Of a stretch of 64,000 nt of DNA, positions 22,780 through 59,326 are shown one piece after another. The stretch lies in the IMG/VR virus record IMGVR_UViG_3300044731_002337, positions 124,001 to 188,000 of that record; one strand, given 5' to 3'. The position numbers and the translations under genes are program-made. Positions within the stretch are counted from its first letter, which is position 1, and the number at the start of each line of letters is the position of its first letter. The notes under the pieces are model-generated. The model had not been told where the DNA came from. It did not search any database and saw nothing but the letters and a program-made list of their open reading frames with translations.

Positions 22780-25700
22780 TTATGATGAGCAAGTATTGCA
22801 AACAACTGGTGTAGTAAAATTGAATTTGGTGGGCTTATCAATGGTGCGGAAATAGTAGCTGGCTGTTTTGAGGCCAAGATTCCAAGCAAAGCACCAGTAC
22901 TTGACAACTTCGATCGCCATATTCTCTCCACGTTTCATGTAGACATTGAGACTGATACTTTGGTCGACAAAACGAGAGCGATCGGCAGCCATGAGAGTAA
23001 TTTGGGCAAGTGGGATATCTACAATGGATCGGTAACGTTTCTTAATGTAATCCGGAATGGAAGCAATGTCGGTGAGTGATCCATTATTCGCTAGAATTTC
23101 ATCGTGAACAGGAATGGTAGATTTGGCATCAAATTTCCAAAGACCTGCTTCTTTGAGATCTCGTACCAGGTATTTGTTGAAGACATTGTATTCTCCAGTG
23201 TTCATGTATCGTTTGAAGCTACAGGCCAGGGCAGGTTCAAAGCATTCAAAGTTTCCTAAAATGATGGAAGTACCTGCAGTGGGCATATGAGCCATTAACA
23301 GGGAGTTGAGCATTTTGTTGGGTTTGGTCTTGATATCATGACGTAATTGGTCCCAGTTCCATCCGACACTTGTAGTAATATAGTCATGATGGGGTCTCTT
23401 TTCATAAATCTTTTGAGCCTGATTGTATTTGTCCCATAAATCTTGTTGTAAAATACCGGATTCAATGGGTGATCCAGCGATACTAGGATAATTGCCCCGT
23501 TCTTGAGCCAGGTCATGGGAACCTTTTAGGGCGGCATAATACATGGTTTCAGCGATTTGATAATTGAGACGTTGTGCTTCTTTTGAATCAAAGTCGAGTT
23601 TGAGGATCATAAACACATCTGCGAGTCCTTGAATGCCAATGCCAATAGGTCGATGTCTCATGTTGGAACGCCTTGTAGATTCCAGGGGATAAAAATTGAG
23701 GTCAATGACTTGGTTCATATGGTACACTAGATTATATACCACTTCATACAATTCTTGAAAATCGTATTGATCATCATGGATAAATGCCTTGAGGGAAACG
23801 GAGCACAAATTACAAACCGCGGTTTCTTCTGGTGAAGAGTATTCAATGATTTCTGTGCATAGATTAGATGATTTGATGGTACCGAGATTTTTTTGGTTGG
23901 ATTTGTGGTTACAGTGATCTTTGAATAGGATGTAAGGTCCGCCGGATTCGACTTGTGATTTGACAATGGCGAGGACAAACTCTCGAATGGGAACTTGTGC
24001 TTCATAGAGCCCTTGTGATTCATACTGGAGGTAGAGTTGTTCAAAAGCTTCACCATGCACGTCATCTAGCCCTCGACACTTTTGAGGGTTCATGAGGGAC
24101 CATACTTGTGGTTGATTGTGTTGATAATCTAGAATGATACGTTTCATGAACAAGTCGTTAACCCATAGAGCATAGAATAGGTCAGTAGCTGAAATGGTAT
24201 TGGCGGTCAAGGGGGATTTCAATTCTAAGAATTCCAAAACATCTGCATGCCATGGTTCTAGATAGACTGCAATGCTTCCTTTACGTTTACCACCACCATT
24301 ATGAGCGACCATACAGGATGTGACATAGGATGGGTCGGAGGACCTTTCCATTTCCAGGTCGAAGCAGTCATCAATGGTGGGTGGGCTGTGAATTACATTG
24401 TGAATAGGTAGACAGAGGTAGTTTTGGACTTGTATGCATGGTGTGAGGCGGCGACCATCTTGATCCTTGGGTGGCCATATCATACGGTATTCATTAGGAT
24501 AAATCTCCTCAATCAGAGCAAAAGAATATCCAAGTCGGTTAGCACAATATTCCAACGAATGCTTCTTTTGGGGGGAAACATTCTTTAACGTGGGACCTTG
24601 AAGTTCAAGACCTTCCATGAAATCGGCGACTTGGTCTAAGGGGGCGAATAGAATGGAGGCAGGAATGTCTTGTCGATTACATTGAAGTAGACCCATTAAT
24701 TGACCTTCAGGGATAATGATTTCCGTAGTGGAAAGACAGCGAACAGATACAATGGAAGATAACCAGGTTCGATCAATGTCTGGGCTTAGGAGGTGAAAGG
24801 TGATGAGTCCTTCTTGACATTGCCAGTTCATATCTGCGGTGATGAGGCCCAAGAGTTTTAAGAGATTTGAGTCGACATCAGGGATTCGTTTTTGGAGTTC
24901 AATGGTGTTGCAAATAGCGAGCCAGTGTTTGCGGGGATCGATTTCGTGGATGGTGGTGTAAAAGGGGAGAGCTCTTGATCCAAAGGTGTTGTCAATGACG
25001 AGAATAGGGTGAGAATCGGTGATGCCATGTGATACACGGTGATTAGGGAAAACTAAATGGTGGAATTGGAGTGATTTCTTGGTGGAAATAATTTTCTGAA
25101 TATGGTGAAAGTCTCCAAAACGGTTCATGACAAGATCATTGACTTGTAAGGATTGAATTTTGCGCCAACCAGTGGAAGTCATGACCCGGGTATCACCTTG
25201 AAAGCATTGGTCGACATAGCATGCTACAGAGTTATACACTTTGAGCATGGGTCCTACACCTCCAGTGACTCCATTAGTACCCTTGATATACGAATTCTTG
25301 CTACGGGTATTGTGGATGTTGATGCCAATGCCACCCGAGTGTTTGGAGATGATGCTACATTGCTTCCATCGATCAGCAATACCTTCAATGGAATCATCCC
25401 CAGCATATAAGAGAAAACATGAACTCATTTGGGGATGCATGGTTCCCGCGTTAAAGAGAGTAGGTGTAGCCATGATACATTTGCCCAGAGATAAATAATG
25501 ATACAACTGTATAGCTCTCTTGGTATTCATAGGGTTCAGGGCAATCGCTATTCTCATCCACATAAATTGTGGTTCCTCCAAAGGTACTGACACCATGATA
25601 TGCTGCCCATTATGTTCTACTCGCTTGTAAGTGTTGAGAAGGTATTTGCCATTAATAAGTTGGGTAATCGCCGCACAGTCAAATATAATGTTTCGATCAT

Positions 25701-26124
25701 GGTCAATTGTGGCTTCAATGAGGTCCATGTCAGGAATGTGTTCAAATGATTCGTGTAAGAGTGGTGACAACTCTCCCGTGCGTGGATTCACATTAGCGCG
25801 TGCTAGTCGAACATATTCTTTAAACGAATTTGGGGTGGATTTCTGGAGATTGGAGACTATAATTTGGCCGGCAAAGAGGTTATTGTCTGCAAAATAAGTA
25901 TCATGGGCGGCAACATTCGCAGATATAGTATCGAGTTCAGAGGTGGAAATGCCATCTGTAATTTGGTCAACTGTAGCACGGCATATTTTGAAAATTGACA
26001 CATCAATGGGACGTTTTAAGATACGGGTCATATGATCACGTATCGAGTTAAGACGTGCAGTAATTCGTTGAGGATCAATGGGTTCTTTTGTTCCATCACG
26101 GGTAGTAACACATCGAGGTTCCAT
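22780..26124 (-). CDS. nrdA: Ribonucleotide reductase large (alpha/R1) subunit, class Ia, containing an intein
   Basis: N-terminal ATP cone, ATPTLFNAG, MSSCFLL, GGIG, KGTNG, YVDQ/GGGKRKG, LEPWH, SNLCTEI, RPIGIGIQG, MPTAGTS, DQSIS, C-terminal CxxC. Confidence 0.97.
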   Translation of the reverse strand: MEPRCVTTRDGTKEPIDPQRITARLNSIRDHMTRILKRPIDVSIFKICRATVDQITDGISTSELDTISANVAAHDTYFADNNLFAGQIIVSNLQKSTPNSFKEYVRLARANVNPRTGELSPLLHESFEHIPDMDLIEATIDHDRNIIFDCAAITQLINGKYLLNTYKRVEHNGQHIMVSVPLEEPQFMWMRIAIALNPMNTKRAIQLYHYLSLGKCIMATPTLFNAGTMHPQMSSCFLLYAGDDSIEGIADRWKQCSIISKHSGGIGINIHNTRSKNSYIKGTNGVTGGVGPMLKVYNSVACYVDQCFQGDTRVMTSTGWRKIQSLQVNDLVMNRFGDFHHIQKIISTKKSLQFHHLVFPNHRVSHGITDSHPILVIDNTFGSRALPFYTTIHEIDPRKHWLAICNTIELQKRIPDVDSNLLKLLGLITADMNWQCQEGLITFHLLSPDIDRTWLSSIVSVRCLSTTEIIIPEGQLMGLLQCNRQDIPASILFAPLDQVADFMEGLELQGPTLKNVSPQKKHSLEYCANRLGYSFALIEEIYPNEYRMIWPPKDQDGRRLTPCIQVQNYLCLPIHNVIHSPPTIDDCFDLEMERSSDPSYVTSCMVAHNGGGKRKGSIAVYLEPWHADVLEFLELKSPLTANTISATDLFYALWVNDLFMKRIILDYQHNQPQVWSLMNPQKCRGLDDVHGEAFEQLYLQYESQGLYEAQVPIREFVLAIVKSQVESGGPYILFKDHCNHKSNQKNLGTIKSSNLCTEIIEYSSPEETAVCNLCSVSLKAFIHDDQYDFQELYEVVYNLVYHMNQVIDLNFYPLESTRRSNMRHRPIGIGIQGLADVFMILKLDFDSKEAQRLNYQIAETMYYAALKGSHDLAQERGNYPSIAGSPIESGILQQDLWDKYNQAQKIYEKRPHHDYITTSVGWNWDQLRHDIKTKPNKMLNSLLMAHMPTAGTSIILGNFECFEPALACSFKRYMNTGEYNVFNKYLVRDLKEAGLWKFDAKSTIPVHDEILANNGSLTDIASIPDYIKKRYRSIVDIPLAQITLMAADRSRFVDQSISLNVYMKRGENMAIEVVKYWCFAWNLGLKTASYYFRTIDKPTKFNFTTPVVCNTCSS
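24298..25206 (-). mobile_element. Intein (303 aa) with degenerate LAGLIDADG domain; C-extein +1 residue is Gly
   Basis: Starts CFQGDTRVMT, ends CFDLEM...CMVAHN; removal gives seamless YVDQ-GGGKRKGS; blocks LLGLITADM and FMEGLELQG are eroded LAGLIDADG motifs. Confidence 0.92.
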
Positions 26125-26141
26125 AATTTCTCTTTTTATTA

Positions 26142-27770
26142 TTACGGGTTATTTGGTCTCGGAACTTTAGAACCACGTTTTATAGAATTATTTCCGCGCA
26201 CCTTGGCTCGAAGTACTTCCAAACGTTTAATTCTTTCTTTCGTATCCTCTTCACTTTCCTTGGCGAGTTTCTCACTTTCCACGAATTGTTGTTGAACCTC
26301 TTTGAATGTACTGGCAACACCTTGGTTTTGAGTGACAATATCATGAATCAAAGGGAAAAGTTTGGTGTTATTGACTTTCACAATCTCATCCGAAAGTTCA
26401 AAGACGTTGGACATGAGAATGCATGTAATAAAACGTTCATACATGGGCTGCGTAATATTCCATGAGGATTCCCACGCTTTTTGAGATTCATCAAACATAT
26501 GTTTAAAAAAACCAAGAAATTCCTTCTTTTCTTTATCGTTGGGGATATCATTAAACATACGGTTGATAAATGTAACACCATACGTTTTTCGATCATAGTA
26601 GTCCATGGCATCAATATAGGTCATTTCTTGTTGAATCACTCGATGAAGGACTAATTTATGGAAACCATTGCTAGAACAGAGTGATTTGAAATCAATAGCA
26701 TTTTCGTGATAGTCTACGATTCCAGGAAACTTTTTTGGAATGTTATTGGCCAAGTATTGTAGAGAGAGATAGATGAGAGTCTTGATAATGATGGTGAATG
26801 ATTCTACGGGATTGTCTTTTTGGTAATCTTTCAAGTTGGAAGCATTCATGAGATTAATGAAATGTTCCTTGTGAAAAATATAGAGTTCCATGAATAGGAT
26901 AGTCATAAAACGTACAAATTGAACGATGGTAGCGATTAAGATGAGACGTTTATAATAGTGGGTCCCAGGGACTTTATCACTATACCATGTAATATATGTC
27001 TTTTCATTGGCTTCTTTTTCCAACTCAGGCTTACGTGCAAATGTCTGAAAATCGTGAGCGAGGTAAGTGGAAATGTCATCGGGTAGATAACGGTGTAGAA
27101 AATAAATGTGCATGTATTGAGGTACTGTTCTTCGGTCTTCAATCGAGTCAAAATATGCGTGATCGCGTCGAAATTGTTGACGAACACTTGGCATTTTGAT
27201 GGTAACATAATGGGTGCGAAGAATATCATGATGTTCTTGGAGGAAACGGTGAAATGGTCGACAACAAACAGTGAGGCCCATGTAAAAAGGCATGGATCGA
27301 GGATTGGTACATGAATCTAAAAGTCCTGCTTGTTCTTCACATGCAAATACTCTTTTATACTTTTCAGAAGAAAAAGTCACAGGTAATTTATCGATTTGAT
27401 TGGGGTTTAAAAGTGAGACTTGACGTTTTTCAATGGTTTTACTTTGTAACTGACTAAGACCAGCTGAGATGCTAACATTAAATTTCATAAGATCTTCCTT
27501 CTCGATATCAGACATGATCATTAGTGTTACAAGTGCATCTCCATAATCCTGTTTCATCAATGCATCGTTATATTTGAGTTCAATCAATTGTTGAATTCGA
27601 GTATATTGTTCTTTGGTTTTGGTAAGATCTTGTTTGACTATATTGTTTTGGTCTTGCATGGTATTCTTATCATTGGTGATTAAGCTTACCAGCTGATTGA
27701 CTGCATTTACACTTTCAGCTGAGAAACCAGTATATTGATTGGGTATTGGAGCTGGTTGTAATTGGGACAT
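26142..27770 (-). CDS. Hypothetical protein
   Basis: 542 aa ORF with coiled-coil termini. Confidence 0.7.
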   Translation of the reverse strand: MSQLQPAPIPNQYTGFSAESVNAVNQLVSLITNDKNTMQDQNNIVKQDLTKTKEQYTRIQQLIELKYNDALMKQDYGDALVTLMIMSDIEKEDLMKFNVSISAGLSQLQSKTIEKRQVSLLNPNQIDKLPVTFSSEKYKRVFACEEQAGLLDSCTNPRSMPFYMGLTVCCRPFHRFLQEHHDILRTHYVTIKMPSVRQQFRRDHAYFDSIEDRRTVPQYMHIYFLHRYLPDDISTYLAHDFQTFARKPELEKEANEKTYITWYSDKVPGTHYYKRLILIATIVQFVRFMTILFMELYIFHKEHFINLMNASNLKDYQKDNPVESFTIIIKTLIYLSLQYLANNIPKKFPGIVDYHENAIDFKSLCSSNGFHKLVLHRVIQQEMTYIDAMDYYDRKTYGVTFINRMFNDIPNDKEKKEFLGFFKHMFDESQKAWESSWNITQPMYERFITCILMSNVFELSDEIVKVNNTKLFPLIHDIVTQNQGVASTFKEVQQQFVESEKLAKESEEDTKERIKRLEVLRAKVRGNNSIKRGSKVPRPNNP

Positions 27771-29172: not shown

Positions 29173-29415
29173 ATGTCATGGTTAGAAAGTGCCAAGACTC
29201 AATGTTATGATTTTGTATTTGCAAGACCTATGAAACAAATTAGTGAAAAGACTGGATATCTGAAATGGATGATGATCTTTTGTATTTTAACTTCAGTCAC
29301 TTCATTATTTGTGTGTTGTTATATGTATCACAATGTTAAAGGGATGAAGCAACATATAGTATACCATCGAAACCCTGCTTATACATCAATGAAAAATTAT
29401 CAGCAGCCTACATAG
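29173..29415 (+). CDS. Small single-TM protein
   Basis: 80 aa with a central hydrophobic segment; A-rich start context. Confidence 0.55.
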   Translation: MSWLESAKTQCYDFVFARPMKQISEKTGYLKWMMIFCILTSVTSLFVCCYMYHNVKGMKQHIVYHRNPAYTSMKNYQQPT

Positions 29416-29436
29416 AAAAAACAAGAGTATAAAAAA

Positions 29437-30582
29437 ATGTCGGATTATTGTTCGACGCCACAGCCAAGCCATGAAGAGGTCGTGGCTAAGAATACACCGG
29501 ATTATTTTCGCACATTAGAGCAACATCGTACGAATGATACGATCTATGTAGCAGTGAAATATGTATTTATTCAGCAGCATCCAACTGAGCAATTACCATT
29601 ATATCTAGTGCAAGCGAATCATGATCAATTGAATCAGAGTTTTTTGGGTAAGAATGTGCAGGAGATAGATACTTTACCGAATACGAGTAAACAGCCATGG
29701 AAGGATCTAGTAGCAGTAGCGAATATTCAATTTTTACCGTTGAAGAGTAGTGAAGTGACATTGGAGGTATTGACTACGAATAAGGTATTGGATAATCAGA
29801 ATCCATTGAATGATTGTGTGGAGATAGCGTGTAGTCATGATAATATAATTAATGTGTATTTTGCCAAGTTGAGTGGGCAGACGAGTACGTTGGGAATAGC
29901 GAGGTTAGCGTCCAATATTATATTTTGTGATATGCGAACTGTGGGGAGTATAGCTGTCCCAGGAATGATGACTGGATATAGTCTGGGTAAAGTATTGGTA
30001 CATGAAATGGGGCATGCATTAGGGTTGTATCATACATTTTCGGATGCGACTAATCGTTGTGATAATCATAAACGGTATCCGGACATTCCAGAGCAATTGA
30101 GTCCAAATTTTGTAGCATCGGTGGAATACCGTGGTGGTCAATGGGTTCAAGTGAATGATAACCGTGATCGTGAACTCGCCGGTGAATCAGATATTCGCTC
30201 ATGTGCAAAAGTTGTTGGACAAATTGATGGCCAGTTAAGTGAACAAGCAGTCAATTATATGGATTATGCACGCGATCCAGATTCACGAATGTTTACTCAA
30301 AGTCAAGTTGATGTTATGCGAGCCCATTTAGTGAAGCATTCCAATTATACTCGAGAATCTGGTGTGACCACTACGAATACCACTGCAGCACAATCCGCCA
30401 TTCCCGAAGATTGTCATGATGATACCAGTGACTCGAGTGGACTATCAACTGCTGCCATTGTTGGCATTGTCATTGCTGCGGCGACTCTATTAGTTATCAT
30501 CATTGGATTCTTGATATGGAGAAATTATTATCAAGCTCCGATTCGAGAAGAGTTGAGAAATGTAAAACAACAAGAAAGATGA
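29437..30582 (+). CDS. Pappalysin/M43-family zinc metalloprotease, type-I membrane protein
   Basis: HEMGHALGLYHTF, Met-turn NYMDY, MFTQSQVDVMR, C-terminal TM. Confidence 0.9.
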   Translation: MSDYCSTPQPSHEEVVAKNTPDYFRTLEQHRTNDTIYVAVKYVFIQQHPTEQLPLYLVQANHDQLNQSFLGKNVQEIDTLPNTSKQPWKDLVAVANIQFLPLKSSEVTLEVLTTNKVLDNQNPLNDCVEIACSHDNIINVYFAKLSGQTSTLGIARLASNIIFCDMRTVGSIAVPGMMTGYSLGKVLVHEMGHALGLYHTFSDATNRCDNHKRYPDIPEQLSPNFVASVEYRGGQWVQVNDNRDRELAGESDIRSCAKVVGQIDGQLSEQAVNYMDYARDPDSRMFTQSQVDVMRAHLVKHSNYTRESGVTTTNTTAAQSAIPEDCHDDTSDSSGLSTAAIVGIVIAAATLLVIIIGFLIWRNYYQAPIREELRNVKQQER

Positions 30583-31623
30583 GTTGTAATGCATCTCAGA
30601 CATTGGTCCATGCGTGTCGATTCATGGAATGTTTAATGGAAAAAAATGGTGTTAGTAAACAAGAGGTGAAGCATATGTACTCATCTGGACAAGAATGTGC
30701 ATTCTTATATCATCCCAAGATTAGTGTGATATTGTTTCGCCCTGATGATCCTACAACAACAACTTATTTAAAAATGAGTGTGTTAGATCCAGTATTCATT
30801 CCTACCGATACAGTGATTGAACAAGGGAAGAAGAAAACAGAAATACAAACCTCCAACTTAACTGAATCAGTGTGGAAACATTTTAGGGTATTTATTCTTT
30901 TTTTTTTGTCTTTCTCTTGTTTGTTTGTTTAATGTTATGATAGGCTACGTATCCTCTTGTGAAACGATGGATTATGGTCTCCTCAGACATTAATACATTT
31001 ACCAATACTCTATTACTAGAACTAATGTGGATGTCTGAATCAATGTCTATGCAACACTTTAAGTACATTGAATTGGGAGATCCTCGAATTATTACTGAAC
31101 ACAAGTTTCAACCATTGAGTGTGGAAAGAGTGGATAAGGCTCCAACTGAAAACTGTCGACAAATTCTAGTGCATGATATCTTTGCACGATTTTATGGAGC
31201 ACAAGTAGGGCATGTATTGAAATGTCAAGGTATCCATAGACAATCTGGTGAACAAACAGATTATTTACAGGTATATTTTTTTTCGTTTACATGTACTTTA
31301 CAGCTTATACTATGTTTTAGGTATCTTATATTCATTACATTAAAGGAAATAAGTTGAAACCAGCAAAACTTCCAGAACAAGCAAAACAGGAAAGTATTGT
31401 GTTGGAAGAAGAGGAAGAGGAGGATGAGGAACTGGAAGAAGAAGAAGAAGAAGAGGAGGAAGATGAAATAGAGGAAGTACAAGTAGAGGAAGAAACATCA
31501 GAGTCTGAAACTGAATCGGAAGAGGAATCGGAATCCGAGTCTGAGGATGAAGAGGAAGATGAAGATGATTCTGAATCGGATGAGGAGGACGAAGAGGATG
31601 ATGATGATGATGATGAGCAATAA
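30579..31623 (+). CDS. rpb5: RNA polymerase subunit RPB5 homolog with acidic C-terminal tail; three exons join(30579..30887,30944..31270,31321..31623)
   Basis: RPB5 C-domain ITEHKFQP...QILVHDIFARFYGAQVGHVLKC...YLQV; three track ORFs join in frame (939 nt) after removing two GT-AG introns. Confidence 0.8.
30888..30943 (+). other. Spliceosomal-type intron 1 of RPB5 (56 nt, phase 0)
   Basis: AGG|GTATTT...T-rich...TTTAAT...GATAG|GCT; splicing joins WKHFR to ATYPLVKRWIM in the frame of ORF 30959. Confidence 0.8.
31271..31320 (+). other. Spliceosomal-type intron 2 of RPB5 (50 nt, phase 0)
   Basis: CAG|GTATAT...TTTTAG|GTA; joins DYLQ to VSYIHYIKGNKLKPAK in the frame of acidic ORF 31354. Confidence 0.7.
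31405..31616 (+). repeat. Poly-Glu/Asp low-complexity coding repeat
   Basis: GAA/GAG/GAT runs. Confidence 0.9.
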
Positions 31624-31629
31624 ACACAT

Positions 31630-33669
31630 TTATGATAAAGAAGGTGGTTCTGGTGGTTGAGGTGGTGAAATGGAAGGTGAAGTGGGTAAGGAAGCTGGTA
31701 GTATATCTCGCGGTAATGAATCAAATGGAGGTAGATTTGATATCATAGTAATACGTTCATTGATACGTCGTTTCCATTGATCTGTAAAAGGTTGTTGTTC
31801 CAGGTCATCTACCAATGTAACGAAAAAGGGAATAGAAGCCCAGTTAGCTGACGTATGTTGTAAAGCACTTCGTAACGCATCATAAGGTTCTTCTAAAGGA
31901 TATTTCTGTAAAGCATAATTGAAAAAAGTGGATAGTAAATTAGGATTAGGTGGTAGTTCAGTCAGATTTACATAGAGTATTTGTCCATCGAGAGTTGTAG
32001 CTTGTTGAGTGAGCAAGTTGTACTGCATGACTTGTGGACTATAATCAAAAAACTTACGAATGGTAGCAAACACTTGATTGGCTTGTTGGCGAGTAAGTTC
32101 ACCTCGAATATCTAATTGCCGTTGTGGGTTAAGTTGTTTTCGCAAATACTCCCGTTTACTTAATCGATTAAATGCAGACCTAAATTCAATAGCACTTGAA
32201 AGTTTCATGGATGGGAAATGGTTAGCGTCATTATTAGTCGACATCATCTCTAGTTGAGAAGGATCTTGTTCGCGGCGTTGTACAACTTCATAAATAGGGG
32301 TTTTCAATAATTCATTCAATGTATGTGTATTTCTTTCATGTAATTCTTTGGCCTTGTCACGAACATCTGCTCGAGCTGGAATGACTGCAACGACGGGTTG
32401 GGCAGCGACTTCAGCCACATTATCTTTTTGAATGAGATTTCCTAGGCAAGTAGTAAATTGTTTAATGGCATCATAATTATCAATTTGAATATTGGCGGAT
32501 GCAGCCTTTCGATCATCATCTGGTGGCGTTGGAGCCGGATGTTTCATAAAATAAAGCAACATATCAAACATGGTCGTCAATAAATAATTCGCATTTGCCG
32601 CATCGAGTTCATATTCCTCAGTAAGAATTTGAAATAGATTGATTTGGGGATCACATGCATATTGATTGTCACCAAACAGGAAATTGGCTACATCATCTTC
32701 ATTTTGAGTGTACTTGCGAAATACATCTATAACATTCTTCCTAGTTTTGCATTTGAGTGTTATGTTATTACGGCGATATAAGGATAAGGCTGCAGTGCGC
32801 CAGGAAATGAGAAACTCGCATGCATATTGATGGTTTAGAATTTGACTACGATCTTCAGGAAAGCTGTAGGTTACGTGTGTGAATACATGGGAGAAAATAT
32901 TGGCAAAGTTGGAGGAGCTTTGATTGGTATGTCTCCAGAATAAGTTGAAAGGTGATTGTTTGAATTCAAATACCTTTTTGTTGTTCAAAGCTCGTGGTTT
33001 CAAGTGTTTGATGGGGCATGATTTATGTTTGTAGAGTCCACCTTGTTTATCTTGTGTGGATAAAGGTTCATGGCAAGCGGGGCACTGAATAGGTTTTTGG
33101 AAACATTCATGACAGACAGCATGTTCTTCTACGCCTTGATTATGAGTGTCGCAAACATAGTTCGTTTTGCAATAAAAACATGGGGCTATATTGGTGCGTG
33201 ATTGACATTCGTAGCATGTGATGGGGCATTTATGGTTGAATTCTTGTATGCCGCAAATGGGGCACTTTTGGATGGTGATGGTTGTACCTCCATATTCGGT
33301 GAGAACTGGGGAGCCATTATCTAATAGGGTGGATTTGAGACGATGAATGCGTAGCCAAGTGATGGTAATAGGATCGACATCCGTTTTGGGTAAGTACCAT
33401 TCTTTGGAGACGTCATAATAGGTATCTGTCTTATTTTGGAAGCGCATGAAATCGTACCATACGAGATCACCACGGACATGTCTACGCCAATAGACTTGAT
33501 GTTGACCTAATGAGAGGGATGGACAATGACGAATATCATCAGGTGGAATAACTTGGGGTAATGTTTTGGGTAAAGAATAAGGAGGCATCAATGGTCGAAG
33601 ATATTGTTCTTGAAAACATCTTATAAATGGTATTTCATTCTCATGATAACAAGAAGGTAAATGAATCAT
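31630..33669 (-). CDS. Hypothetical protein with multiple CxxC zinc-binding motifs
   Basis: CPICG, CYEC, CFYC, CHEC, CPACH. Confidence 0.7.
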   Translation of the reverse strand: MIHLPSCYHENEIPFIRCFQEQYLRPLMPPYSLPKTLPQVIPPDDIRHCPSLSLGQHQVYWRRHVRGDLVWYDFMRFQNKTDTYYDVSKEWYLPKTDVDPITITWLRIHRLKSTLLDNGSPVLTEYGGTTITIQKCPICGIQEFNHKCPITCYECQSRTNIAPCFYCKTNYVCDTHNQGVEEHAVCHECFQKPIQCPACHEPLSTQDKQGGLYKHKSCPIKHLKPRALNNKKVFEFKQSPFNLFWRHTNQSSSNFANIFSHVFTHVTYSFPEDRSQILNHQYACEFLISWRTAALSLYRRNNITLKCKTRKNVIDVFRKYTQNEDDVANFLFGDNQYACDPQINLFQILTEEYELDAANANYLLTTMFDMLLYFMKHPAPTPPDDDRKAASANIQIDNYDAIKQFTTCLGNLIQKDNVAEVAAQPVVAVIPARADVRDKAKELHERNTHTLNELLKTPIYEVVQRREQDPSQLEMMSTNNDANHFPSMKLSSAIEFRSAFNRLSKREYLRKQLNPQRQLDIRGELTRQQANQVFATIRKFFDYSPQVMQYNLLTQQATTLDGQILYVNLTELPPNPNLLSTFFNYALQKYPLEEPYDALRSALQHTSANWASIPFFVTLVDDLEQQPFTDQWKRRINERITMISNLPPFDSLPRDILPASLPTSPSISPPQPPEPPSLS

Positions 33670-33696
33670 GTTTGTTTTTTTTTTCTTGTTTTTTTT

Positions 33697-34272
33697 TTAT
33701 TTTGTGACTGAATAAATTTTTGGTGTTGTAATACTCCATTCACTTAAGTTTTCTTTCGATTTCTCATAAGTCTGTTGTAACCAGGAGATTAATGATTCGT
33801 TACTATTGGTAAATTGAATATCTGATTTTTTCATGACGACCAATGTGGCCGCGAAAGCCGCTAACGTATGCCATATAGAATGCCACAATTCATATTTGAA
33901 CGTAGTAACACTGGTATCTTCACGTGATCCATGAGTAAGGTAGGCAACGAATGCGGTAATACCCGTGCTGAAAATGGCCAATACACGCCAATGGAAGAAT
34001 CCGAGTTCAGCAGTTAATCGTAGGCCTAGAACTAGGATCACCATGACGGTAAGGCTAGCCCAAATTTCATCCGAGGTTGCGTGTCTGCATTCATTGGACA
34101 AGTGATACAGTGTAGAGAAGATGGCAGCCATAAAGAGGATGACAGATATGGCAACAGGTTGAGTGTAAAGAGAGATAAGGGCAGGGACAAACATAAGGGT
34201 GGAGGATACTTTTAAATACACTCTCATGTTCGAGTCATAATTGTTGTTGCTGTGATGATAATGATGATTCAT
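33697..34272 (-). CDS. CREST-superfamily multi-TM protein (TMEM8, ceramidase or PAQR-like)
   Basis: FSTLYH (SxxxH), a conserved Asp (SDEIW), HSIWH (HxxxH), several TM segments. Confidence 0.7.
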   Translation of the reverse strand: MNHHYHHSNNNYDSNMRVYLKVSSTLMFVPALISLYTQPVAISVILFMAAIFSTLYHLSNECRHATSDEIWASLTVMVILVLGLRLTAELGFFHWRVLAIFSTGITAFVAYLTHGSREDTSVTTFKYELWHSIWHTLAAFAATLVVMKKSDIQFTNSNESLISWLQQTYEKSKENLSEWSITTPKIYSVTK

Positions 34273-38028: not shown

Positions 38029-38980
38029 TCATTGGATTACGGGAAAGGGAAGTAGTTCATTCACAGAAATATTTTCAGCAATGGCGATAATGGTGTCTGT
38101 AACTTGTTTCCATGTAAAAGGTAGTGATTGTGAGGGACCAGAAATGATCCATTGTGCATCACGGTATTCGCATGCCACAACAGCATTCTTGGGGAGAGGA
38201 TAAGGACAAATAGCGGCCGAAATGATGACATTATCTTTGGATTTGAGTAGATAGTCGCCTTGATAGAAGCGGTAGTATTGTACTGTCGAAGGAGTTCCAT
38301 CAGGCCAAGGTAATTCTCGAATCGATTCAAATGGTTGAATAGTACAATAAATGCGATGTGATCGTAATCGTAATTGGGGTATTACTTTAGATCCGTATGA
38401 TGATGAAGAAGAAGAAGAAGAAGATAATGCTTCAGATGAAGTATCCATGAAATCCAAGGCTTCAATAGGTAGCATGTAGGTAAATTTTAGAATATGACTC
38501 ATTTCCACTAGTGGTTTGACATGAAGTCCAAAGGGAATTTCAGGATGATGCACTACCTTATTATACAATGTGGGGTAAAGTGATGATTTCACTACGCAAG
38601 GGGATACAGAGATGGAGGTAGTTGAAGCAGTAGGACATTTCGAGATCATTTGAATGGCTTGAATGGCTAATTCCCATCGTTGATCGTACCTGAGATGTTT
38701 GGCAGGGTTTCCACACATCATATAACAATCCATAATCGTAAAGCAAAATCCTTGGTCGTTAAGTTGAACCATTTCTCCATCGAGTACGGTTCCAGCAAAT
38801 AATGGGATAGGTAGTTTGGAAGGCATATGTTTCAGTTTGGTGGTCTTCTTTTGTTGATCCATGAGAAAGAGTTGTATGCAGTTCTTGTATGTGGTGAATA
38901 ATAATAGCCCGCGGATACCATTTAAGTAAGGTACCATGACATAACGTTGAGGTTGGAATTCGAGTTTCTTGGGTCGAAAG
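38029..38980 (-). other. Degenerate mRNA-capping guanylyltransferase plus OB domain fused to RPB1
   Basis: YVMVPYLNGIR (motif I KxDG changed to YLNG), TVLDGEMV (III), FTIMDCYMMCG (IIIa), YDQRW, VVACEY...W, TIIAIAENISVNELL. Confidence 0.75.
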
Positions 38981-41900
38981 GGGATTACATCTTGAATCAT
39001 TTGAAAGTGATAGCCACTACCAAGACCCATATTCTTATTGCACATGGCAGCAGCTGCAATAGTATTCCCTGGATCCCACCTTCCCATATCTACATTTTCC
39101 ATAACGTGTCTAGATGACTCTTCAAACGAGGCTTGCTGCATAGGTGCAATACGTTTGGCAGCTTCATTCTTCTTGTATCCTTCATGTATACCAGTCATGG
39201 TCATGTATCGAGCCATGAGTTCCAAGTGTCGTGCATCAGTAGAATCTCCCATGACTAACACGAATTCATGGGTCAACACTTGGGTTGTGGCATAAACGCC
39301 CATAAACTTTTGGGTATCGCCGGTATGAGTGCTGTACGATTGCTGAACATCGACTAATGGGTGCGTATTCCAAATTGAAAAATCAGATTGGTCCGTAATG
39401 CATACCCAGCGATTTGAAGCTTGTTGTTCAATAATATACTTGGAGATGCCATCCAATTTACCCCTCACAATGGTTTGGTGAAAGATATTGTAAGCGACGC
39501 CGTACAGGGCATGTGTGGTTGGATTCTTGACCTTGCACTTGATTTGTCTCAAGGCGAAAGTCCAAATGCCCACGGAAGGTGTTAAACGAATACAAAATAG
39601 GGTCTTGTCTACTTTGTGAATCGCGGAAATGGGAATTTGGATGGTATGGTGTAATGCGAGAATGATATTGTAGTCTTGTACCAAATAATATGCTTTGAGC
39701 TTCGGGTCAATATGGAGGCGGATAGTCATACTTGATTCATCAATCTTAGGGTAGTCAGAGAGGATTTCAGAGAGATATACAGTTCTCCAGGTCATGGCCG
39801 TATAATGGACTTCAGCTTCCGTGACATGAGGTAGAAAGACAATATTCATCATGGCTAGGCTATTATTGGCATCAATCAAGTTATTCAATTTGTTGACTCC
39901 TGTAACTTGCGTATTCTTTTTCCCAGAGGAGTGAGGCGACTTTAAATTACCTTGTGTGTATACTTCTCCCACACTATGAGTCGCATTCATTCCAATAGCT
40001 TCTCCTGGCAAAATGGTTCTTCTTTGTATCGTATGGTAAATCAATCGAAGTAACTTGTACCAGGCAACACTAGACAACTTCCATACCACCAATACATTAT
40101 GAGGGCAGCACCACACACGTAATAAAACATGAAGCTTGTGGTGTTGGGCAGGAACAAGTCTCTCCTTGACCATACTTTGCCAGATATAGGTAAACGACGT
40201 AATGATTTCGGTTTCCATAAGATCAGGTGATGAAGTATAAGTGGTGGCTTGTTGAAAGAGATGCTTGATATGAAAGGGAGATTTGAATGTCAAGTCTTGA
40301 TCCTTGATTTTATCCCAAAGTAACCATGACTCACGATAGAATACATGATGATGATGATTAGGCCAAAGTTCTAGAGTTGGCGGTGTAATTGTTTCCCATA
40401 CCAAGTATTGAGGGTCAAGAGAATCACCTCCATAAGTAAACCAAACGGTTGGACCAGGTTTATGGATATCTTCTTTGCGAAAGGCATGTTGTCTTCGATT
40501 GCCAGAATAACTGTCTACTGCATGGCCAAAAGTGTCTGCAATAATACCCATATTACAATAGGCCATCTTCTTCTCCAAGTAGCCTGATTGTGAAGTACCC
40601 TTGATCTTGTTGATCACTGATTCCGTGGTAGGTTGTGCTTGGGTCATTAGATCATGAAAAGTGAGACCCATAGCATAAGGATGTTTGATAAAGCCATGCG
40701 CTACAAGTGATTTGTCGTGAGGGTGGAAATGGCTAGTCACATTAGGAATTCGTTCATGTGTGAGATACGCTTGTCCCACAACACCCATCATTTGAGATAA
40801 GGATGCCCAATTTGCCTTGGTGCCACTTTGAATCATAGCCAAGTATCCATTGTGTAACGTATTTCGATCCCTTGCTGTTACCAACTCTTCAATCCGATCT
40901 TGAATCGACTTGGTGTAAAACTGAATGTGCTGTCCAACTACATCTTCAGGTTGCTCCTGCATATTTTGAAGCTTGTGATAATTGGGACATGAATCCGCAT
41001 CTTCCCAATACATTTGGTGATAGCTACAAGAGTGTCCACGCATGTCTAGATATTCTTGGGTGATTAGATAGCCTTCATACAGGAAATCCATGGCTTCATC
41101 GAGGGAATGGTACATGATGATATCTCTAAGGACGCCATTGAGAACTTTTTCCGTAAACACGGTATGAATGTGAATGGAGCTAGGTAGGATACAATGCATC
41201 ACTTGTCTCCCGGTCCATAATTGGCGAGGTTTCCAAACTGCAGGTGGAGGTATGGTGATGAACCGAGTCACATGTCCTAGTAACACCGAGACTTGATCCT
41301 TGGTCAAAAATGTATCTTCATGGGTCAATAAAAAAGCGCCAATCACTGGATTTTGACTGAATTTAATCCATAGTCCTCCATCTTTCATGGTGTGAAACTT
41401 GACCGCCATAATCTCCATCACCTCTGCCCGAGCTTCAATGGTTTGAGGAATGTGTACACTTAGTTCATCGCCATCACAATCCGCATTAAAAGGTAAAAAA
41501 ACACTCACGTGAAGATTAATGACAAACGAATTGGGAATCACTTTGACTTTGAATCCCATAGTCGATCCACGATGGAGTGTTGGTGCTCGATTCACAATCA
41601 CCCAATCATCCTCCAAAATGTGACGACGAACATAAGCCACGTCATGCACGTTAATGTCGCGACGGTTATCATAGTATTCCAAATCAATGGTGCGTCCATC
41701 CTTCATTTGCATGGAATTGGCGCCAGGATAGTGATGTGGGCCATTCAAAATCCATTTGTGAGCTTGGTTCATGTTGAAGGAAGATACGGGGACGTTAATG
41801 GTCAGTCCCATACATGTGGATTGCGGGAGGCCACAGTAAGTAGGGTGAATCCATGTACAACCTTCCAATACAAGTCGTGCATAATGATATTTTCGCCACG

Positions 41901-43109
41901 CCACAATAAAGCCTTGCATACGGCTACTTTGTTTCGATTTGCTAGTCTTCTTAAACTTGGTATCCACTGAATTGGGGGTTTTACCATATTGGGCATTCTT
42001 GGGGATTAGTTTGCGATACTTTTCAAAGTGGAATGCAGAGATTTGGTTTTGGAGGTTTCGCCAGGCACATTGATTGGTCACGTTGCCACAAGACGCTTCA
42101 TTGGAAAGTTTACATTTGCTCAGTTTCTGGTTAATGAGTTGAAGCTGGGCCCGGTATTGTTGCCGTTGTTGAATATTGAGTTGTTTTCGTTCTTCGCTGG
42201 TTAAGGATTCTTTTTGAAAGCAAACTTTAAAATCTGGATGAATGAATCCCTTGTATAGATATTGGGAAAGAATAATGGGGTCCTTGGATTGTTGCAATTT
42301 CATTTCGAGTAAAAGTTTGCTTTGGAGGACATTTTTGAGCATCTTGGTCCAATCATTGGGGTATTGTTTAGAGCCATTTTTGGTAGGGAAAGTACTATTA
42401 GGTCTAGTGGTGAGTGCCGGGACAGCTAGAGCCGAAAACATTCGAGCCTTGGGTAAGTTGTATTGTCCAAGTCCCATAATATGCATCATTTGTTCATTCT
42501 TCGAAATGTCCTCCAAGAGTTTTTGAATTTCAAATGGACCAAACGAAATGGGCTTCCATGATGGATTGGATTGGTAAAGTTGAAAATCAGTCTTGGAAAG
42601 TGTTACAACTCCCCGTATAATATTATCATGACCCGATTCTGTTGTCCATTTGATATAGGATTTACCACATTCACATGCCCTGAAGAAACGAGTATATTTA
42701 AGTAACGTATTGAGTCGTTTTTCAGAGGGTAGTTGAAGAACTTTCTCGCACATATGGGAAGTAATGCGGAGGCGTTGACAATAAAAGCAAACTAGATTGA
42801 GTATTTTCAAAAGGGTTGACATGGCGCCTACATGGAAACAGGGAATAGGTAATTCCATATGTCCAGTATGTCCAGGACAATTATGGGTTGTCTCTCCACA
42901 TTGCTCACATAATGAATCCCATGATTTACATCCCAAAACACCTACAAGAAGAAAAGTAAAGAAAGATCAAAGGGCGAAAAAAAAAATGTACCTGAAGTAA
43001 GATCTGTATTGGTTTTGATTTCTAATACACTTTGTTTACGAACACGATCCGAGTCAATAAGGAAACATTGTAATGCATCTACTTCACGTAATGGTGGAAG
43101 TGAATCCAT
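38029..43109 (-). CDS. rpb1: RNA polymerase largest subunit (RPB1) with fused C-terminal guanylyltransferase-like domain; exons complement(join(38029..42941,42992..43109))
   Basis: CEQC...CPGHTGH, CFYC, NRAPTLH, FNADCDGDE, GTSQSGYLEKK, PGEAIG, EVYTQGNLKSPHSSG, LGSGYHF; exon 1 supplies RVRKQSVLEI; spliced length 5031 nt is in frame; an upstream in-frame ATG at 43178 is possible. Confidence 0.93.
42942..42991 (-). other. Spliceosomal-type intron in RPB1 (50 nt, phase 1)
   Basis: CAG|GTACAT...polypyrimidine...TTGTAG|GTG; joins TDLTSG to VLGCKSWDSLCEQC. Confidence 0.85.
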
Positions 43110-51792: not shown

Positions 51793-52263
51793 TTACTTGA
51801 CAAGGTACATGTTGGCTTCGGTTCCAGCGTGTAAAAGTTGCCAATTAGGGTGAACGGGTTATTGTGGTTTCACTGGAATTTGACCTAGTAGACCAACAAT
51901 AACCCATTCAGGTCGTTGAGATCTGGGGACATACACTTTAGAGGCATCAAATGTAGGGTTCAAGCGATCTCGTGTAATGGTATTGGTCACAGGATTGGTG
52001 GGAATGATTTTGCTCTTGAGTTCTGCGGTAAGGATGGTTACGCGAGCATTGGTGACCAAGGAGTTGAAGGATGTATTTTCGGGTGTAACAACTACGTCAT
52101 AGTTAGGAATGGTTGGGTTGGTTGTAGTTTCAAATTGATGAAATGCTCCGGCTTCATCACGCCATGATACAACTTGAATTTGTTCGGTCAAGGTATTACC
52201 AAATGGCCCTTTAATATATTTACCTTTCCATTTATTCCATTGCGAATTACCTACAAGAGCTGC
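51793..52263 (-). pseudogene. Peptidase_G2/IMC (fibre autocleavage chaperone) C-terminal fragment with an in-frame stop
   Basis: ALVGNSQWNKWKGKYIKGPFG...YVPRSQRPEWVIVGLLGQIPVKPQ*PVHPNWQLLHAGTEANMYLVK*; no in-frame ATG upstream. Confidence 0.7.
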
Positions 52264-52363
52264 AAAAAAAAAGTATCATACTACCACCAATCATTTTGAT
52301 GTTTGTGGCGTGTTATTCCTTGTCGTGATGCATGGTGGGTTTTTTTTTGTAGAGATGGATAGT

Positions 52364-59207: not shown

Positions 59208-59326
59208 AAAAATGGTTATGCTTTGGGGTGCATTGTAGTCATTTGAAATTGATATAAATGAAAGTTAGGGGAAAAGTTCCGATAGGGGGTTATTAGGGTT
59301 TACTTTTTATCTGTTGTTTGGTGATT

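What the first reader, a model, noticed from the sequence alone, without database searches (positions are those of the whole stretch)
30888..30943. RPB5 intron 1 joins an orphan N-terminal ORF to the RPB5 core
ORF 30516..30932 ends in VFILFFLSFSCLFV, which is a translation of the T-rich intron. Splicing AGG|GT...AG|GCT joins it in frame to the RPB5 C-domain ORF, giving a normal two-domain RPB5 architecture.
Basis: partly seen in the sequence, partly recalled or inferred. Interest (0 to 1): 0.6.

Follow-up and report, generated by a model that had tools for sequence, protein, structure and literature searches.

The report
Short introns split giant-virus RPB5 gene
The 56-base T-rich segment is a real GT-AG intron inside the RNA-polymerase subunit 5 (RPB5) gene of an uncultured freshwater giant virus; related viruses carry the same gene uninterrupted, and two more such introns lie nearby, which suggests the virus needs the host's nuclear splicing machinery.

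Summary
Window 30888-30943 is a 56-nt, T-rich (66% T), phase-0 GT...AG segment. It separates an ORF ending in the intron-derived tail VFILFFLSFSCLFV from the ORF that carries the Rpb5 C-terminal domain.

The window is not a eukaryotic chromosome. It is part of a 295-kb giant-virus record seen in Lake Mendota metagenomes, with RPB1, RPB2, PolB and an A32 packaging ATPase.

The decisive evidence is comparative:
- Two related viruses encode the same protein as one uninterrupted ORF (322 and 312 aa).
- The window's three exon pieces map onto the 322-aa protein end to end: residues 2-98, 99/100-222 and 223-246.
- DNA alignment shows clean gaps of exactly 56 nt, and of 50 nt for a second intron at 31271-31320.
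- A fourth virus has introns at the same two sites with different lengths (42 and 43 nt) and unrelated sequence.
- The exons are under purifying selection (dN/dS about 0.12).

A third intron (50 nt) splits the 5' end of RPB1 at 42942-42991 on the minus strand and is absent from the relative.

The segments have no predicted RNA structure and match no Rfam family, so host spliceosomal removal is the best reading. No RNA run was listed, so splicing itself is inferred. This is a new member of a known kind.

The parts
29437..30582 (+). Upstream neighbour: M43-like zinc metallopeptidase with a C-terminal membrane anchor. Its TGA overlaps the RPB5 start as ATGA.
   Evidence: Pfam Peptidase_M43 E 1.6e-7. 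The same neighbour sits upstream of the RPB5 gene in all relatives.
30579..30887 (+). RPB5 exon 1 (103 codons): first two thirds of the N-terminal jaw domain.
   Evidence: BLASTP to the intronless orthologue P0005 covers residues 2-98, E 2e-28, 45% identity, and ends exactly at the junction. tblastn gives a separate HSP in its own frame.
30888..30943 (+). RPB5 intron 1: 56 nt, GT...AG, phase 0, 66% T, with a T10 run. This is the finding.
   Evidence: Sequence read. L012 and L014 have a clean gap of exactly this segment; L015 has a 42-nt GT..AG segment at the same site. No RNA fold (z +0.62) and no Rfam family.
30944..31270 (+). RPB5 exon 2 (109 codons): end of the N-terminal domain plus the whole Rpb5 C-terminal (RpoH-like) domain.
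   Evidence: Pfam Rpb5_C 14.2 bits, E 0.039, below threshold. 66% identical to P0005 residues 100-222, E 2.3e-33. P0005 itself passes the Rpb5_C threshold.
31271..31320 (+). RPB5 intron 2: 50 nt, GT...AG, phase 0, 54% T. Its 5' end is GTATATTTTTTTTCG, and AGGTAT is repeated at both borders.
   Evidence: Clean 50-nt gap in L012 and L014, and a 43-nt GT..AG segment at the same site in L015. Exon 3 aligns to P0005 from residue 223.
31321..31623 (+). RPB5 exon 3 (100 codons plus TAA): a conserved VxYxYxIKGNKxKPxKLPE stretch followed by a long Glu/Asp tail. This frame contains no ATG.
   Evidence: Translation. BLASTP to P0005 residues 223-246, E 3e-7. The same tail is present in P0005, P0006 and L015.
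42992..43109 (-). RPB1 exon 1: ATG 43109-43107, 39 codons plus one base.
   Evidence: 82% identical to residues 11-49 of the relative's contiguous 1702-aa RPB1, in a separate frame. Sequence.
42942..42991 (-). RPB1 intron: 50 nt, GT...AG, phase 1, 60% T. Its 5' end is GTACATTTTTTTTTTCG.
   Evidence: Exact 50-nt gap in the relative L020. The relative reads ...DLTSGILGCK... straight through. The big ORF's first ATG lies downstream of the conserved CPGHxGH zinc motif.
38029..42941 (-). RPB1 exon 2 (main body, including the stop codon).
   Evidence: Pfam Rpb1 domains 1-5. 72% identical to residues 42-1696 of the relative.

Best explanation
Window 30888-30943 is a genuine intron. It is the first of two (56 and 50 nt) in the RPB5 gene of an uncultured freshwater nucleocytovirus-like giant virus. 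A third, 50-nt intron lies in the neighbouring RPB1 gene.

Removing the two RPB5 introns from the pre-mRNA joins three exons (103 + 109 + 100 codons) into a 312-residue RPB5. That protein has an N-terminal jaw domain, a C-terminal RpoH-like domain and an acidic tail.

The introns are short, U-rich, unstructured and GT-AG bounded. The most likely mechanism is excision by the host's major spliceosome. That would mean these RNA-polymerase genes are expressed through the host nucleus, at least early in infection, as proposed for pandoraviruses and molliviruses.

Shown here: the intron boundaries, collinearity with intronless orthologues, conservation of intron position in a fourth virus, purifying selection on all exons, and absence of self-splicing structure.

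Inferred: that RNA splicing occurs, that the spliceosome does it, and that the nucleus is involved.
For: 1. Uninterrupted orthologues exist. P0005 (322 aa) and P0006 (312 aa) sit in the same gene neighbourhood.

2. The three window exons map to P0005 residues 2-98, 99/100-222 and 223-246 with no residue lost or added. tblastn gives three HSPs in three frames.

3. DNA alignment A1 shows clean 56- and 50-nt gaps in L012 and L014. L015 carries GT..AG segments of 42 and 43 nt at the same two sites, with unrelated sequence.

4. Between the two intron-bearing genes, summed exon by exon, pN is 0.26 and pS is 0.73, giving dN/dS of about 0.12.

5. The DNA is 100% identical in three independent assemblies, so this is not an assembly error.

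6. Stop codons rule out a single frameshift: TAA at 30930 and TAG at 30941. Exon 3 has no ATG.

7. The RPB1 intron was verified in the same way.

8. The motif GTAYATTTTTTTT occurs only twice in the 295-kb record, and both copies are at 5' ends of verified introns; 0.04 are expected by chance in the window.

9. No Rfam family matches and no fold stands out, with z scores of +0.6 to +1.3.

10. RPB5 identity is supported.

11. Precedent: pandoravirus and mollivirus encode an RNA polymerase that is not packaged in the virion, and they carry GT-AG spliceosomal introns (PMC11814242).
Against: There is no transcript evidence. No RNA run holding this sequence was listed, so excision has not been observed.

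The branch point is not established. The window's introns have only loose candidates (CTTTAC, TTTAAT).

A genome-wide scan for T-rich GT..AG segments that join ORFs did not exceed mirror-dinucleotide controls. Intron numbers elsewhere in the genome are therefore unknown.

The virus encodes its own multi-subunit RNA polymerase, which on its face suggests cytoplasmic transcription.

The host is unknown, so its intron style cannot be compared.
Confidence: 0.9

Rival explanations
1. The gene is not spliced. It is a decaying or split gene, for example in an endogenised viral copy, and the ORFs are either untranslated or translated as separate polypeptides.
For: Public gene callers annotate three separate genes of 117, 127 and 89 aa. 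Introns in endogenous nucleocytoviruses have been read as a sign of decay (PMC12768974). There are no RNA data.
Against: All exons are under strong purifying selection against another intron-bearing virus whose synonymous sites are saturated. Exon 3 has no ATG. The first ATG of exon 2 would remove the conserved YPLVKRW stretch. The first ATG of RPB1 exon 2 lies after the essential CPGHxGH zinc motif. Every insertion has GT..AG ends and restores exact collinearity when removed. Only one Rpb5-like locus exists in the record. Neighbouring genes are intact and densely packed.
Confidence: 0.04
2. The segments are removed from RNA by a mechanism other than the host spliceosome, such as a virus-encoded or unknown endonuclease-ligase system, in the cytoplasmic virus factory.
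For: The virus encodes its own RNA polymerase, which suggests cytoplasmic transcription. Two introns share an unusual 13-15-nt 5' motif found nowhere else in the record, and this could be a dedicated recognition signal. In the ~30 kb compared with the relative, all verified introns lie in RNA-polymerase genes.
Against: All five verified segments at the shared sites, in the window and in L015, plus L015's unconfirmed extra 38-nt segment, have canonical GT..AG ends. The window's three segments are also U-rich, but L015's are not. L015's second intron has an ACTAAC box 12 nt upstream of its AG, matching a spliceosomal branch consensus (WCTAAC, reported for Demutovirales in PMC12768974). No bulge-helix-bulge or other structure is predicted. 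No such viral system is known.
Confidence: 0.05
3. The reading frame is restored by recoding, through ribosomal frameshifting or polymerase slippage on the T8-T10 runs, rather than by removal of the segment.
For: Each of the three segments holds a run of 8-10 T near its 5' end.
Against: The upstream frame ends at TAA 30930. The downstream frame is closed by TAG 30941-30943. Joining them would need two shifts through the third frame. The orthologues have no residues corresponding to the segment.
Confidence: 0.01

Closest known systems
Spliceosomal introns of Pandoraviridae and Mollivirus (Nucleocytoviricota)
   Same: These are giant viruses that encode their own multi-subunit RNA polymerase yet carry canonical GT-AG introns. 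This has been taken to mean that early transcription depends on the host nucleus (PMC11814242).
   Different: This virus is AT-rich (38% GC), uncultured and from fresh water. Its introns are very short (50-56 nt) and U-rich. The verified ones lie only in RNA-polymerase subunit genes. No transcriptome or virion proteome exists for it.
Spliceosomal introns of mirusviruses, especially the intron-poor Demutovirales
   Same: They are GT-AG introns that vary in presence, length and sequence between close relatives. A WCTAAC branch motif is reported there (PMC12768974), and L015's second intron contains ACTAAC.
   Different: This record carries an A32-type packaging ATPase, a nucleocytovirus hallmark, and gave no herpes-type terminase hit (that search rang in no control genome, so it shows little). 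In mirusviruses the introns concentrate in virion-morphogenesis genes; here they lie in transcription genes. None of these introns encodes a homing endonuclease, as they are far too short.
Self-splicing group I introns in giant-virus genes (Faustovirus and Kaumoebavirus capsid genes; RNA-polymerase genes of some mimivirus relatives, the latter from my own knowledge)
   Same: These introns also interrupt core giant-virus genes, including RNA-polymerase subunits.
   Different: Group I introns are hundreds of bases long and highly structured. These segments are 50-56 nt, fold no better than shuffled sequence, and match no Rfam family.
Rpb5 / RPABC1 (eukaryotes), RpoH (archaea) and the ASFV RPB5 homologue (chain E of 8q3b)
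   Same: The architecture is the same two domains. The model's N-terminal part superposes on the Rpb5 N-terminal domain (ASFV Z 7.5, Pol II chains Z 6-6.7). The C-terminal part superposes on RpoH (Z about 6). There is a Pfam Rpb5_C match.
   Different: The sequence is very divergent. There is no Rpb5_N Pfam hit, and the Rpb5_C match is borderline. A Glu/Asp tail of about 75-100 residues follows the C-terminal domain, which cellular Rpb5 lacks as far as I know.
Introners (intron-generating mobile elements)
   Same: Two of the three introns share a distinctive 5' segment (GTAYA, then T8-10, then CG) that is found nowhere else in the genome. Intron 2 is flanked by a direct AGGTAT repeat.
   Different: Only two partly similar copies are known. 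They are far shorter than described introners, and they have no inverted repeats or clear target-site duplications.

Membership tests
Rpb5 / RPABC1 RNA-polymerase subunit | C-terminal RpoH-like domain (Pfam PF01191) | tested here: met
   The window's exon 2 alone scores 14.2 bits, E 0.039, below the 23.5-bit cut-off. Its 66%-identical intronless orthologue P0005 scores 23.7 bits, E 4e-5, over profile positions 3-70 of 73. A family profile hits only RPB5 chains in the PDB. Archaeal RpoH superposes on model residues 127-226 at Z about 6. The result is met but borderline.
Rpb5 / RPABC1 RNA-polymerase subunit | Eukaryote-type N-terminal jaw domain (Pfam PF03871) | tested here: inconclusive
   No PF03871 hit in the record or in P0005. 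The fold model's residues 1-145 superpose on residues 1-137 of Rpb5 chains: ASFV Z 7.5 with rmsd 3.1 over 106 residues, and Pol II chains at Z 6-6.7. However, the model is of low confidence (pLDDT 54.7), and Z values under 8 are middling.
Rpb5 / RPABC1 RNA-polymerase subunit | Encoded alongside the large subunits of a multi-subunit RNA polymerase and assembled with them | tested here: met
   RPB1 and RPB2 lie in the same window. Physical assembly into the enzyme was not testable.
Spliceosomal (U2-type, GT-AG) intron | GT at the 5' end and AG at the 3' end, with removal restoring one open frame | tested here: met
   All three window introns and both L015 introns at the shared sites meet this. 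The spliced frames are collinear with the uninterrupted orthologues.
Spliceosomal (U2-type, GT-AG) intron | Polypyrimidine tract and branch-point motif upstream of the AG | tested here: inconclusive
   The window introns are 54-66% T. Candidate branch sites in the window (CTTTAC, TTTAAT) are only loose matches. L015's intron 2 has ACTAAC 12 nt upstream of its AG.
Spliceosomal (U2-type, GT-AG) intron | Excision seen in RNA (junction reads, lariat) and dependent on the spliceosome | not testable with these tools
Group I / group II self-splicing intron | Conserved catalytic RNA structure | tested here: not met
   The segments are only 50-56 nt. Nothing in Rfam matches at E <= 1 over the introns. 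Folding z scores are +0.62, +0.73 and +1.31.
Introner-like mobile intron family | Several near-identical intron copies within one genome | tested here: inconclusive
   Only a shared 13-15-nt 5' motif in two introns. It is unique in the 295-kb record, with 0.04 copies expected by chance in the window. The rest of the intron sequence is not alignable.
Nucleocytoviricota (giant virus) | Hallmark genes: PolB, A32 packaging ATPase, RPB1/RPB2 and the double-jelly-roll capsid protein | tested here: inconclusive
   PolB, A32 (33.7 bits) and RPB1/RPB2 are present. No PF04451 capsid hit was found, but the record is estimated to be only 55% complete, and that search rang in no control genome.

The most novel reading that the evidence does not exclude
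The three introns belong to a small, recently mobile family of introner-like elements, marked by the shared 5' segment GTAYA-T8-10-CG. Under this reading they insert at AG|G sites, have so far been found only in this giant virus's RNA-polymerase genes, and are gained or lost between sister viruses. They would lock expression of the viral polymerase to the host nucleus, capturing a nucleocytovirus in transition from cytoplasmic to nucleus-dependent transcription. This would parallel the 'evolutionary trap' proposed for mirusviruses.
Probability: 0.12. Interest if true: 0.7.

Novelty: new member of a known kind. Interest (0 to 1): 0.5.

Why it matters
Prokaryote-style gene callers split this RPB5 into three unannotated ORFs (117, 127 and 89 aa; none has a Pfam hit on record) and truncate RPB1, so public catalogues misannotate core transcription genes of this virus lineage.

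Biologically, GT-AG introns in the virus's own RNA-polymerase genes imply that their messages must meet a spliceosome. That makes the nucleus-dependence of an uncultured freshwater giant virus directly testable.

Closely related viruses carry zero, two or three introns in the same gene. This offers a clean natural system for studying intron gain and loss in large DNA viruses. It also argues for intron-aware gene calling on giant-virus metagenome assemblies.

Tried and rejected
RNA evidence. The look-up of sequencing runs (kind rna) on window 29400-33700 listed no run.

Searches that found only the query or nothing:
- Word search with exon 2 found only the window's own gene call.
- PDB sequence searches with single exons gave only chance hits.
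- The protein-atlas feature search with exon 1 gave no usable hit.
- The search for related loci with exon 2, the 688-aa neighbour and RPB1 found no relatives. RPB2 found one, but that record is not held for the genome search.

Genome-wide intron scans. Scans for GT..AG segments that join long ORFs gave counts no higher than mirror-dinucleotide controls. Many 'GTAAG' hits are only TAA stop codons of tandem small CxxC paralogues. These scans cannot be used to count introns.

Other candidate introns that could not be verified:
- A PCNA/Rad1-like ORF pair.
- An ankyrin gene.
- An ATG-less Peptidase_G2 ORF.
- A TFIIS zinc-ribbon ORF.

Alternatives ruled out. Terminal inverted repeats as the cause of the GC-skew flip are rejected, as there is no match between the record's ends. 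A mirusvirus identity was considered because no NCLDV capsid hit was found; an A32 ATPase hit argues against it, and no herpes-type terminase hit was found either, though that search rang in no control genome.

Polarity of gain and loss. A four-taxon tree of the neighbouring M43 peptidase was unresolved (56% support), so gain versus loss cannot be decided.

All searches used single exons by reference. The natural uninterrupted orthologue P0005 stood in for the fold prediction.

Full report
**What the window is**

The window is densely packed with long ORFs on both strands and is about 38% GC. Pfam identifies:
- RPB1 at 38032-42966, minus strand.
- RPB2 at 59297-62755, plus strand.
- A ribonucleotide-reductase large subunit with a weak, sub-threshold Hint (intein-like) match.
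- An SNF2 helicase.

The window is bases 124001-188000 of a 294,773-bp linear IMG/VR virus record that CheckV rates 55% complete. That record also holds a single-ORF PolB and an A32-type packaging ATPase. It gave no NCLDV capsid hit and no herpes-type terminase hit, though neither of those searches rang in any control genome.

One metagenome that holds the same DNA is the Lake Mendota co-assembly. I therefore read the window as an uncultured freshwater nucleocytovirus-like giant virus, not a eukaryotic chromosome.

**The observation**

- The frame-0 ORF ends ...SVWKHFR and then VFILFFLSFSCLFV before TAA 30930-30932.
- Codon AGG is 30885-30887, GT is 30888-30889 and AG is 30942-30943.
- GCT at 30944 opens the next ORF, in the frame reached by deleting 56 nt.

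The acceptor AG is part of an in-frame TAG (30941-30943) that closes the downstream frame immediately before exon 2. The two ORFs therefore do not overlap, and no single frameshift can join them.

The same DNA is 100% identical in three other independent assemblies. The interruption is not an assembly error.

**Decisive comparative evidence**

The word search found only the window's own gene call, and Pfam left exon 2 below threshold. I therefore used the exhaustive HMMER search with exon 2 alone. It returned:
- P0005, 322 aa, 66% identical, with exon 2 matching residues 100-222.
- P0006, 312 aa, 53% identical.
- P0007, a 77-aa fragment.

P0005 and P0006 are single uninterrupted ORFs on long contigs (156.6 kb and 94 kb). 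Their gene neighbourhood is the same as in the window: an Rv2179c-like exonuclease, two small genes, an M43 peptidase, and then this gene.

Exon 1 aligns to P0005 residues 2-98 (E 2e-28) and stops exactly at ...WKWFR. Exon 2 begins at residue 99/100. The ORF after a second GT..AG segment (31271-31320, 50 nt) aligns from residue 223. tblastn of the orthologue against the window gives three HSPs in three frames.

The DNA alignment shows clean gaps of exactly 56 and 50 columns in both intronless genes. A fourth virus (L015) has GT..AG segments at the same two codon boundaries, but they are 42 and 43 nt long and their sequences are unrelated.

The three exons sum to 312 codons, which is the length of P0006.

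**Selection**

I compared the window with L015, the two intron-bearing genes, and summed exon by exon. Synonymous sites are saturated (pS 0.73), while nonsynonymous change is low (pN 0.26), giving dN/dS of about 0.12. All exons are therefore maintained as coding sequence in their respective frames, which excludes a pseudogene.

Exon 3 contains no ATG at all. The first ATG of exon 2 would cut off conserved residues.

**A third intron**

I screened for long ORFs whose first ATG lies deep inside the frame. RPB1 was flagged, because its 1645-codon frame starts upstream of the conserved CPGHxGH motif with no ATG before it.

On the minus strand, ATG 43109 opens 39 codons. A 50-nt GT..AG segment follows (42991-42942, phase 1), and then the main frame.

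The relative's RPB1 is one 1702-aa ORF that reads ...DLTSGILGCK... straight across the site. The DNA alignment shows an exact 50-nt gap, and tblastn splits the match into two frames.

Across roughly 30 kb that could be compared with the relative (window about 26-54 kb), these three are the only split genes.

**Kind of intron**

All three introns are 50-56 nt, 54-66% T and GT-AG bounded. They fold no better than shuffled sequence (z +0.6 to +1.3) and match no Rfam family. This excludes group I, group II and structured endonuclease-type introns and fits spliceosomal introns.

RPB5 intron 2 and the RPB1 intron both begin with GTAYA, then T8-10, then CG. The 13-mer GTAYATTTTTTTT occurs only at these two places in the whole 295-kb record, with 0.04 copies expected by chance in the window. 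That points either to shared origin or to a strong shared signal.

L015's second intron carries ACTAAC 12 nt upstream of its AG. This matches the WCTAAC branch consensus reported for one mirusvirus order (PMC12768974).

**Is it RPB5?**

Exon 2 alone is below the Pfam threshold (14.2 bits). The supporting evidence comes from the family:
- The orthologue P0005 just passes the Pfam threshold (23.7 against 23.5 bits).
- A profile built from the family hits only RPB5 chains in the PDB, though weakly (E 0.05-0.7).
- An AlphaFold model of P0005 residues 1-250 is of low confidence (pLDDT 54.7), yet its top 48 Foldseek matches are all Rpb5 or RpoH (best E 4e-5).
- VIA-align superposes model residues 1-145 on the Rpb5 N-terminal domain (ASFV Z 7.5; Pol II chains Z 6-6.7) and residues 127-226 on RpoH (Z about 6).

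The junction at residue 98|99 therefore lies inside the N-terminal domain. Exon 1 is not a separate domain, and exon 2 carries the rest of the jaw domain plus the C-terminal domain.

**Mechanism and context**

The best reading is removal by the host's major spliceosome. This implies that transcripts of the viral polymerase genes pass through the nucleus. Pandoraviruses and molliviruses are the precedent: they encode a polymerase that is not packaged in the virion and they carry GT-AG introns (PMC11814242).

This step is inferred. No RNA run holding the sequence was listed, so no junction reads could be examined.

The direction of change, gain or loss, cannot be decided. The four viruses are roughly equidistant, and a tree of the neighbouring peptidase is unresolved.

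**Limits and omissions**

Every search used single exons by reference, and the natural intronless orthologue served for the fold.

Genome-wide intron scans were not specific. Several further candidates remain unverified: a PCNA-like pair, an ankyrin gene, an ATG-less Peptidase_G2 ORF and a TFIIS ORF.

**Verdict**

The finding is a new member of a known kind, namely spliceosomal-type introns in giant viruses.

Its interest is moderate. It rests on the presence/absence polymorphism among relatives, on the fact that the verified introns all lie in RNA-polymerase genes, and on the shared 5' motif.

Noticed in passing
window 42942-42991 (- strand): A 50-nt GT..AG phase-1 intron splits the 5' end of RPB1. 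Exon 1 is 43109-42992. The intron is absent from the relative's contiguous 1702-aa RPB1.
   Followed up: yes
window 31271-31320 (+): A second RPB5 intron (50 nt) joins a conserved third exon that has no ATG. Its 5' 13-mer GTAYATTTTTTTT is shared only with the RPB1 intron in the whole 295-kb record.
   Followed up: yes
L015 2885-2922: The fourth virus has an extra 38-nt GT..AG segment (frame 0 to frame 2) in RPB5 where the window has none. The intronless relative L012 has a partly similar 42-nt in-frame coding insertion at the same place. This may be intronisation or exonisation, or a frameshift error in a short contig.
   Followed up: partly
whole record G000:C1 (window = 124001-188000); flip at about 282-284 kb: GC skew is strongly positive (+0.1 to +0.37) on the plus strand for about 283 kb regardless of gene orientation, then flips to -0.15 to -0.35. 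There are no terminal inverted repeats. This suggests a single replication switch point and unusually strong strand asymmetry.
   Followed up: partly
window 31396-31620 (+); also P0005, P0006, L015: The RPB5 of this virus clade ends in a Glu/Asp tail of about 75-100 residues after the C-terminal domain. The tail is conserved in all four viruses.
   Followed up: partly
window 22783-26148 (-): The ribonucleotide-reductase large subunit (1122 aa) has a weak, sub-threshold Hint_2 match (20.7 bits against a 28.4-bit cut-off, E 5.7e-4) at residues 315-362, and is longer than usual. This hints at an intein.
   Followed up: no
window 51859-52275 (-): A 138-codon ORF with a Peptidase_G2 (PF11962) domain has no ATG. 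A 10-nt ATG mini-exon (52294-52285) followed by a 25- or 34-nt GT..AG T-rich segment would supply a start. The ORF has no counterpart in the relative.
   Followed up: partly
G000:C1 108873-109934 (L011 873-1934): Two adjacent ORFs, the first with a weak Rad1/PCNA-like hit, are separated by a 48-nt GTA..TAG segment (109317-109364). This may be a split sliding-clamp gene. No relatives were found.
   Followed up: partly
G000:C1 217720-218125 (L025 1221-1626): A TFIIS-type zinc ribbon lies in a 76-codon frame. It is preceded by a 50-codon ATG-started ORF in another frame and by a T-rich GTATTG... segment. Introns of 37 or 67 nt would join the two frames. This is unverified.
   Followed up: partly
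G000:C1 28705-29001 (- strand; L008): An ankyrin-repeat gene shows two 42-nt GT..AG candidate introns. The first junction falls inside an ankyrin repeat. This is unverified.
   Followed up: partly
G000:C1 24.0-25.0 kb, 43.2-44.3 kb, 51.2-51.8 kb: Tandem small paralogous ORFs each end in a CxxC-x(10-11) motif followed directly by TAA. In scans they mimic 'GTAAG' splice donors.
   Followed up: no
window 30579-31623; L003-L005 gene calls: Public gene calls split RPB5 into three genes of 117, 127 and 89 aa, none with a Pfam hit on record; the last is given a TTG start. The RPB5 ATG overlaps the TGA of the upstream M43 peptidase gene as ATGA.
   Followed up: yes
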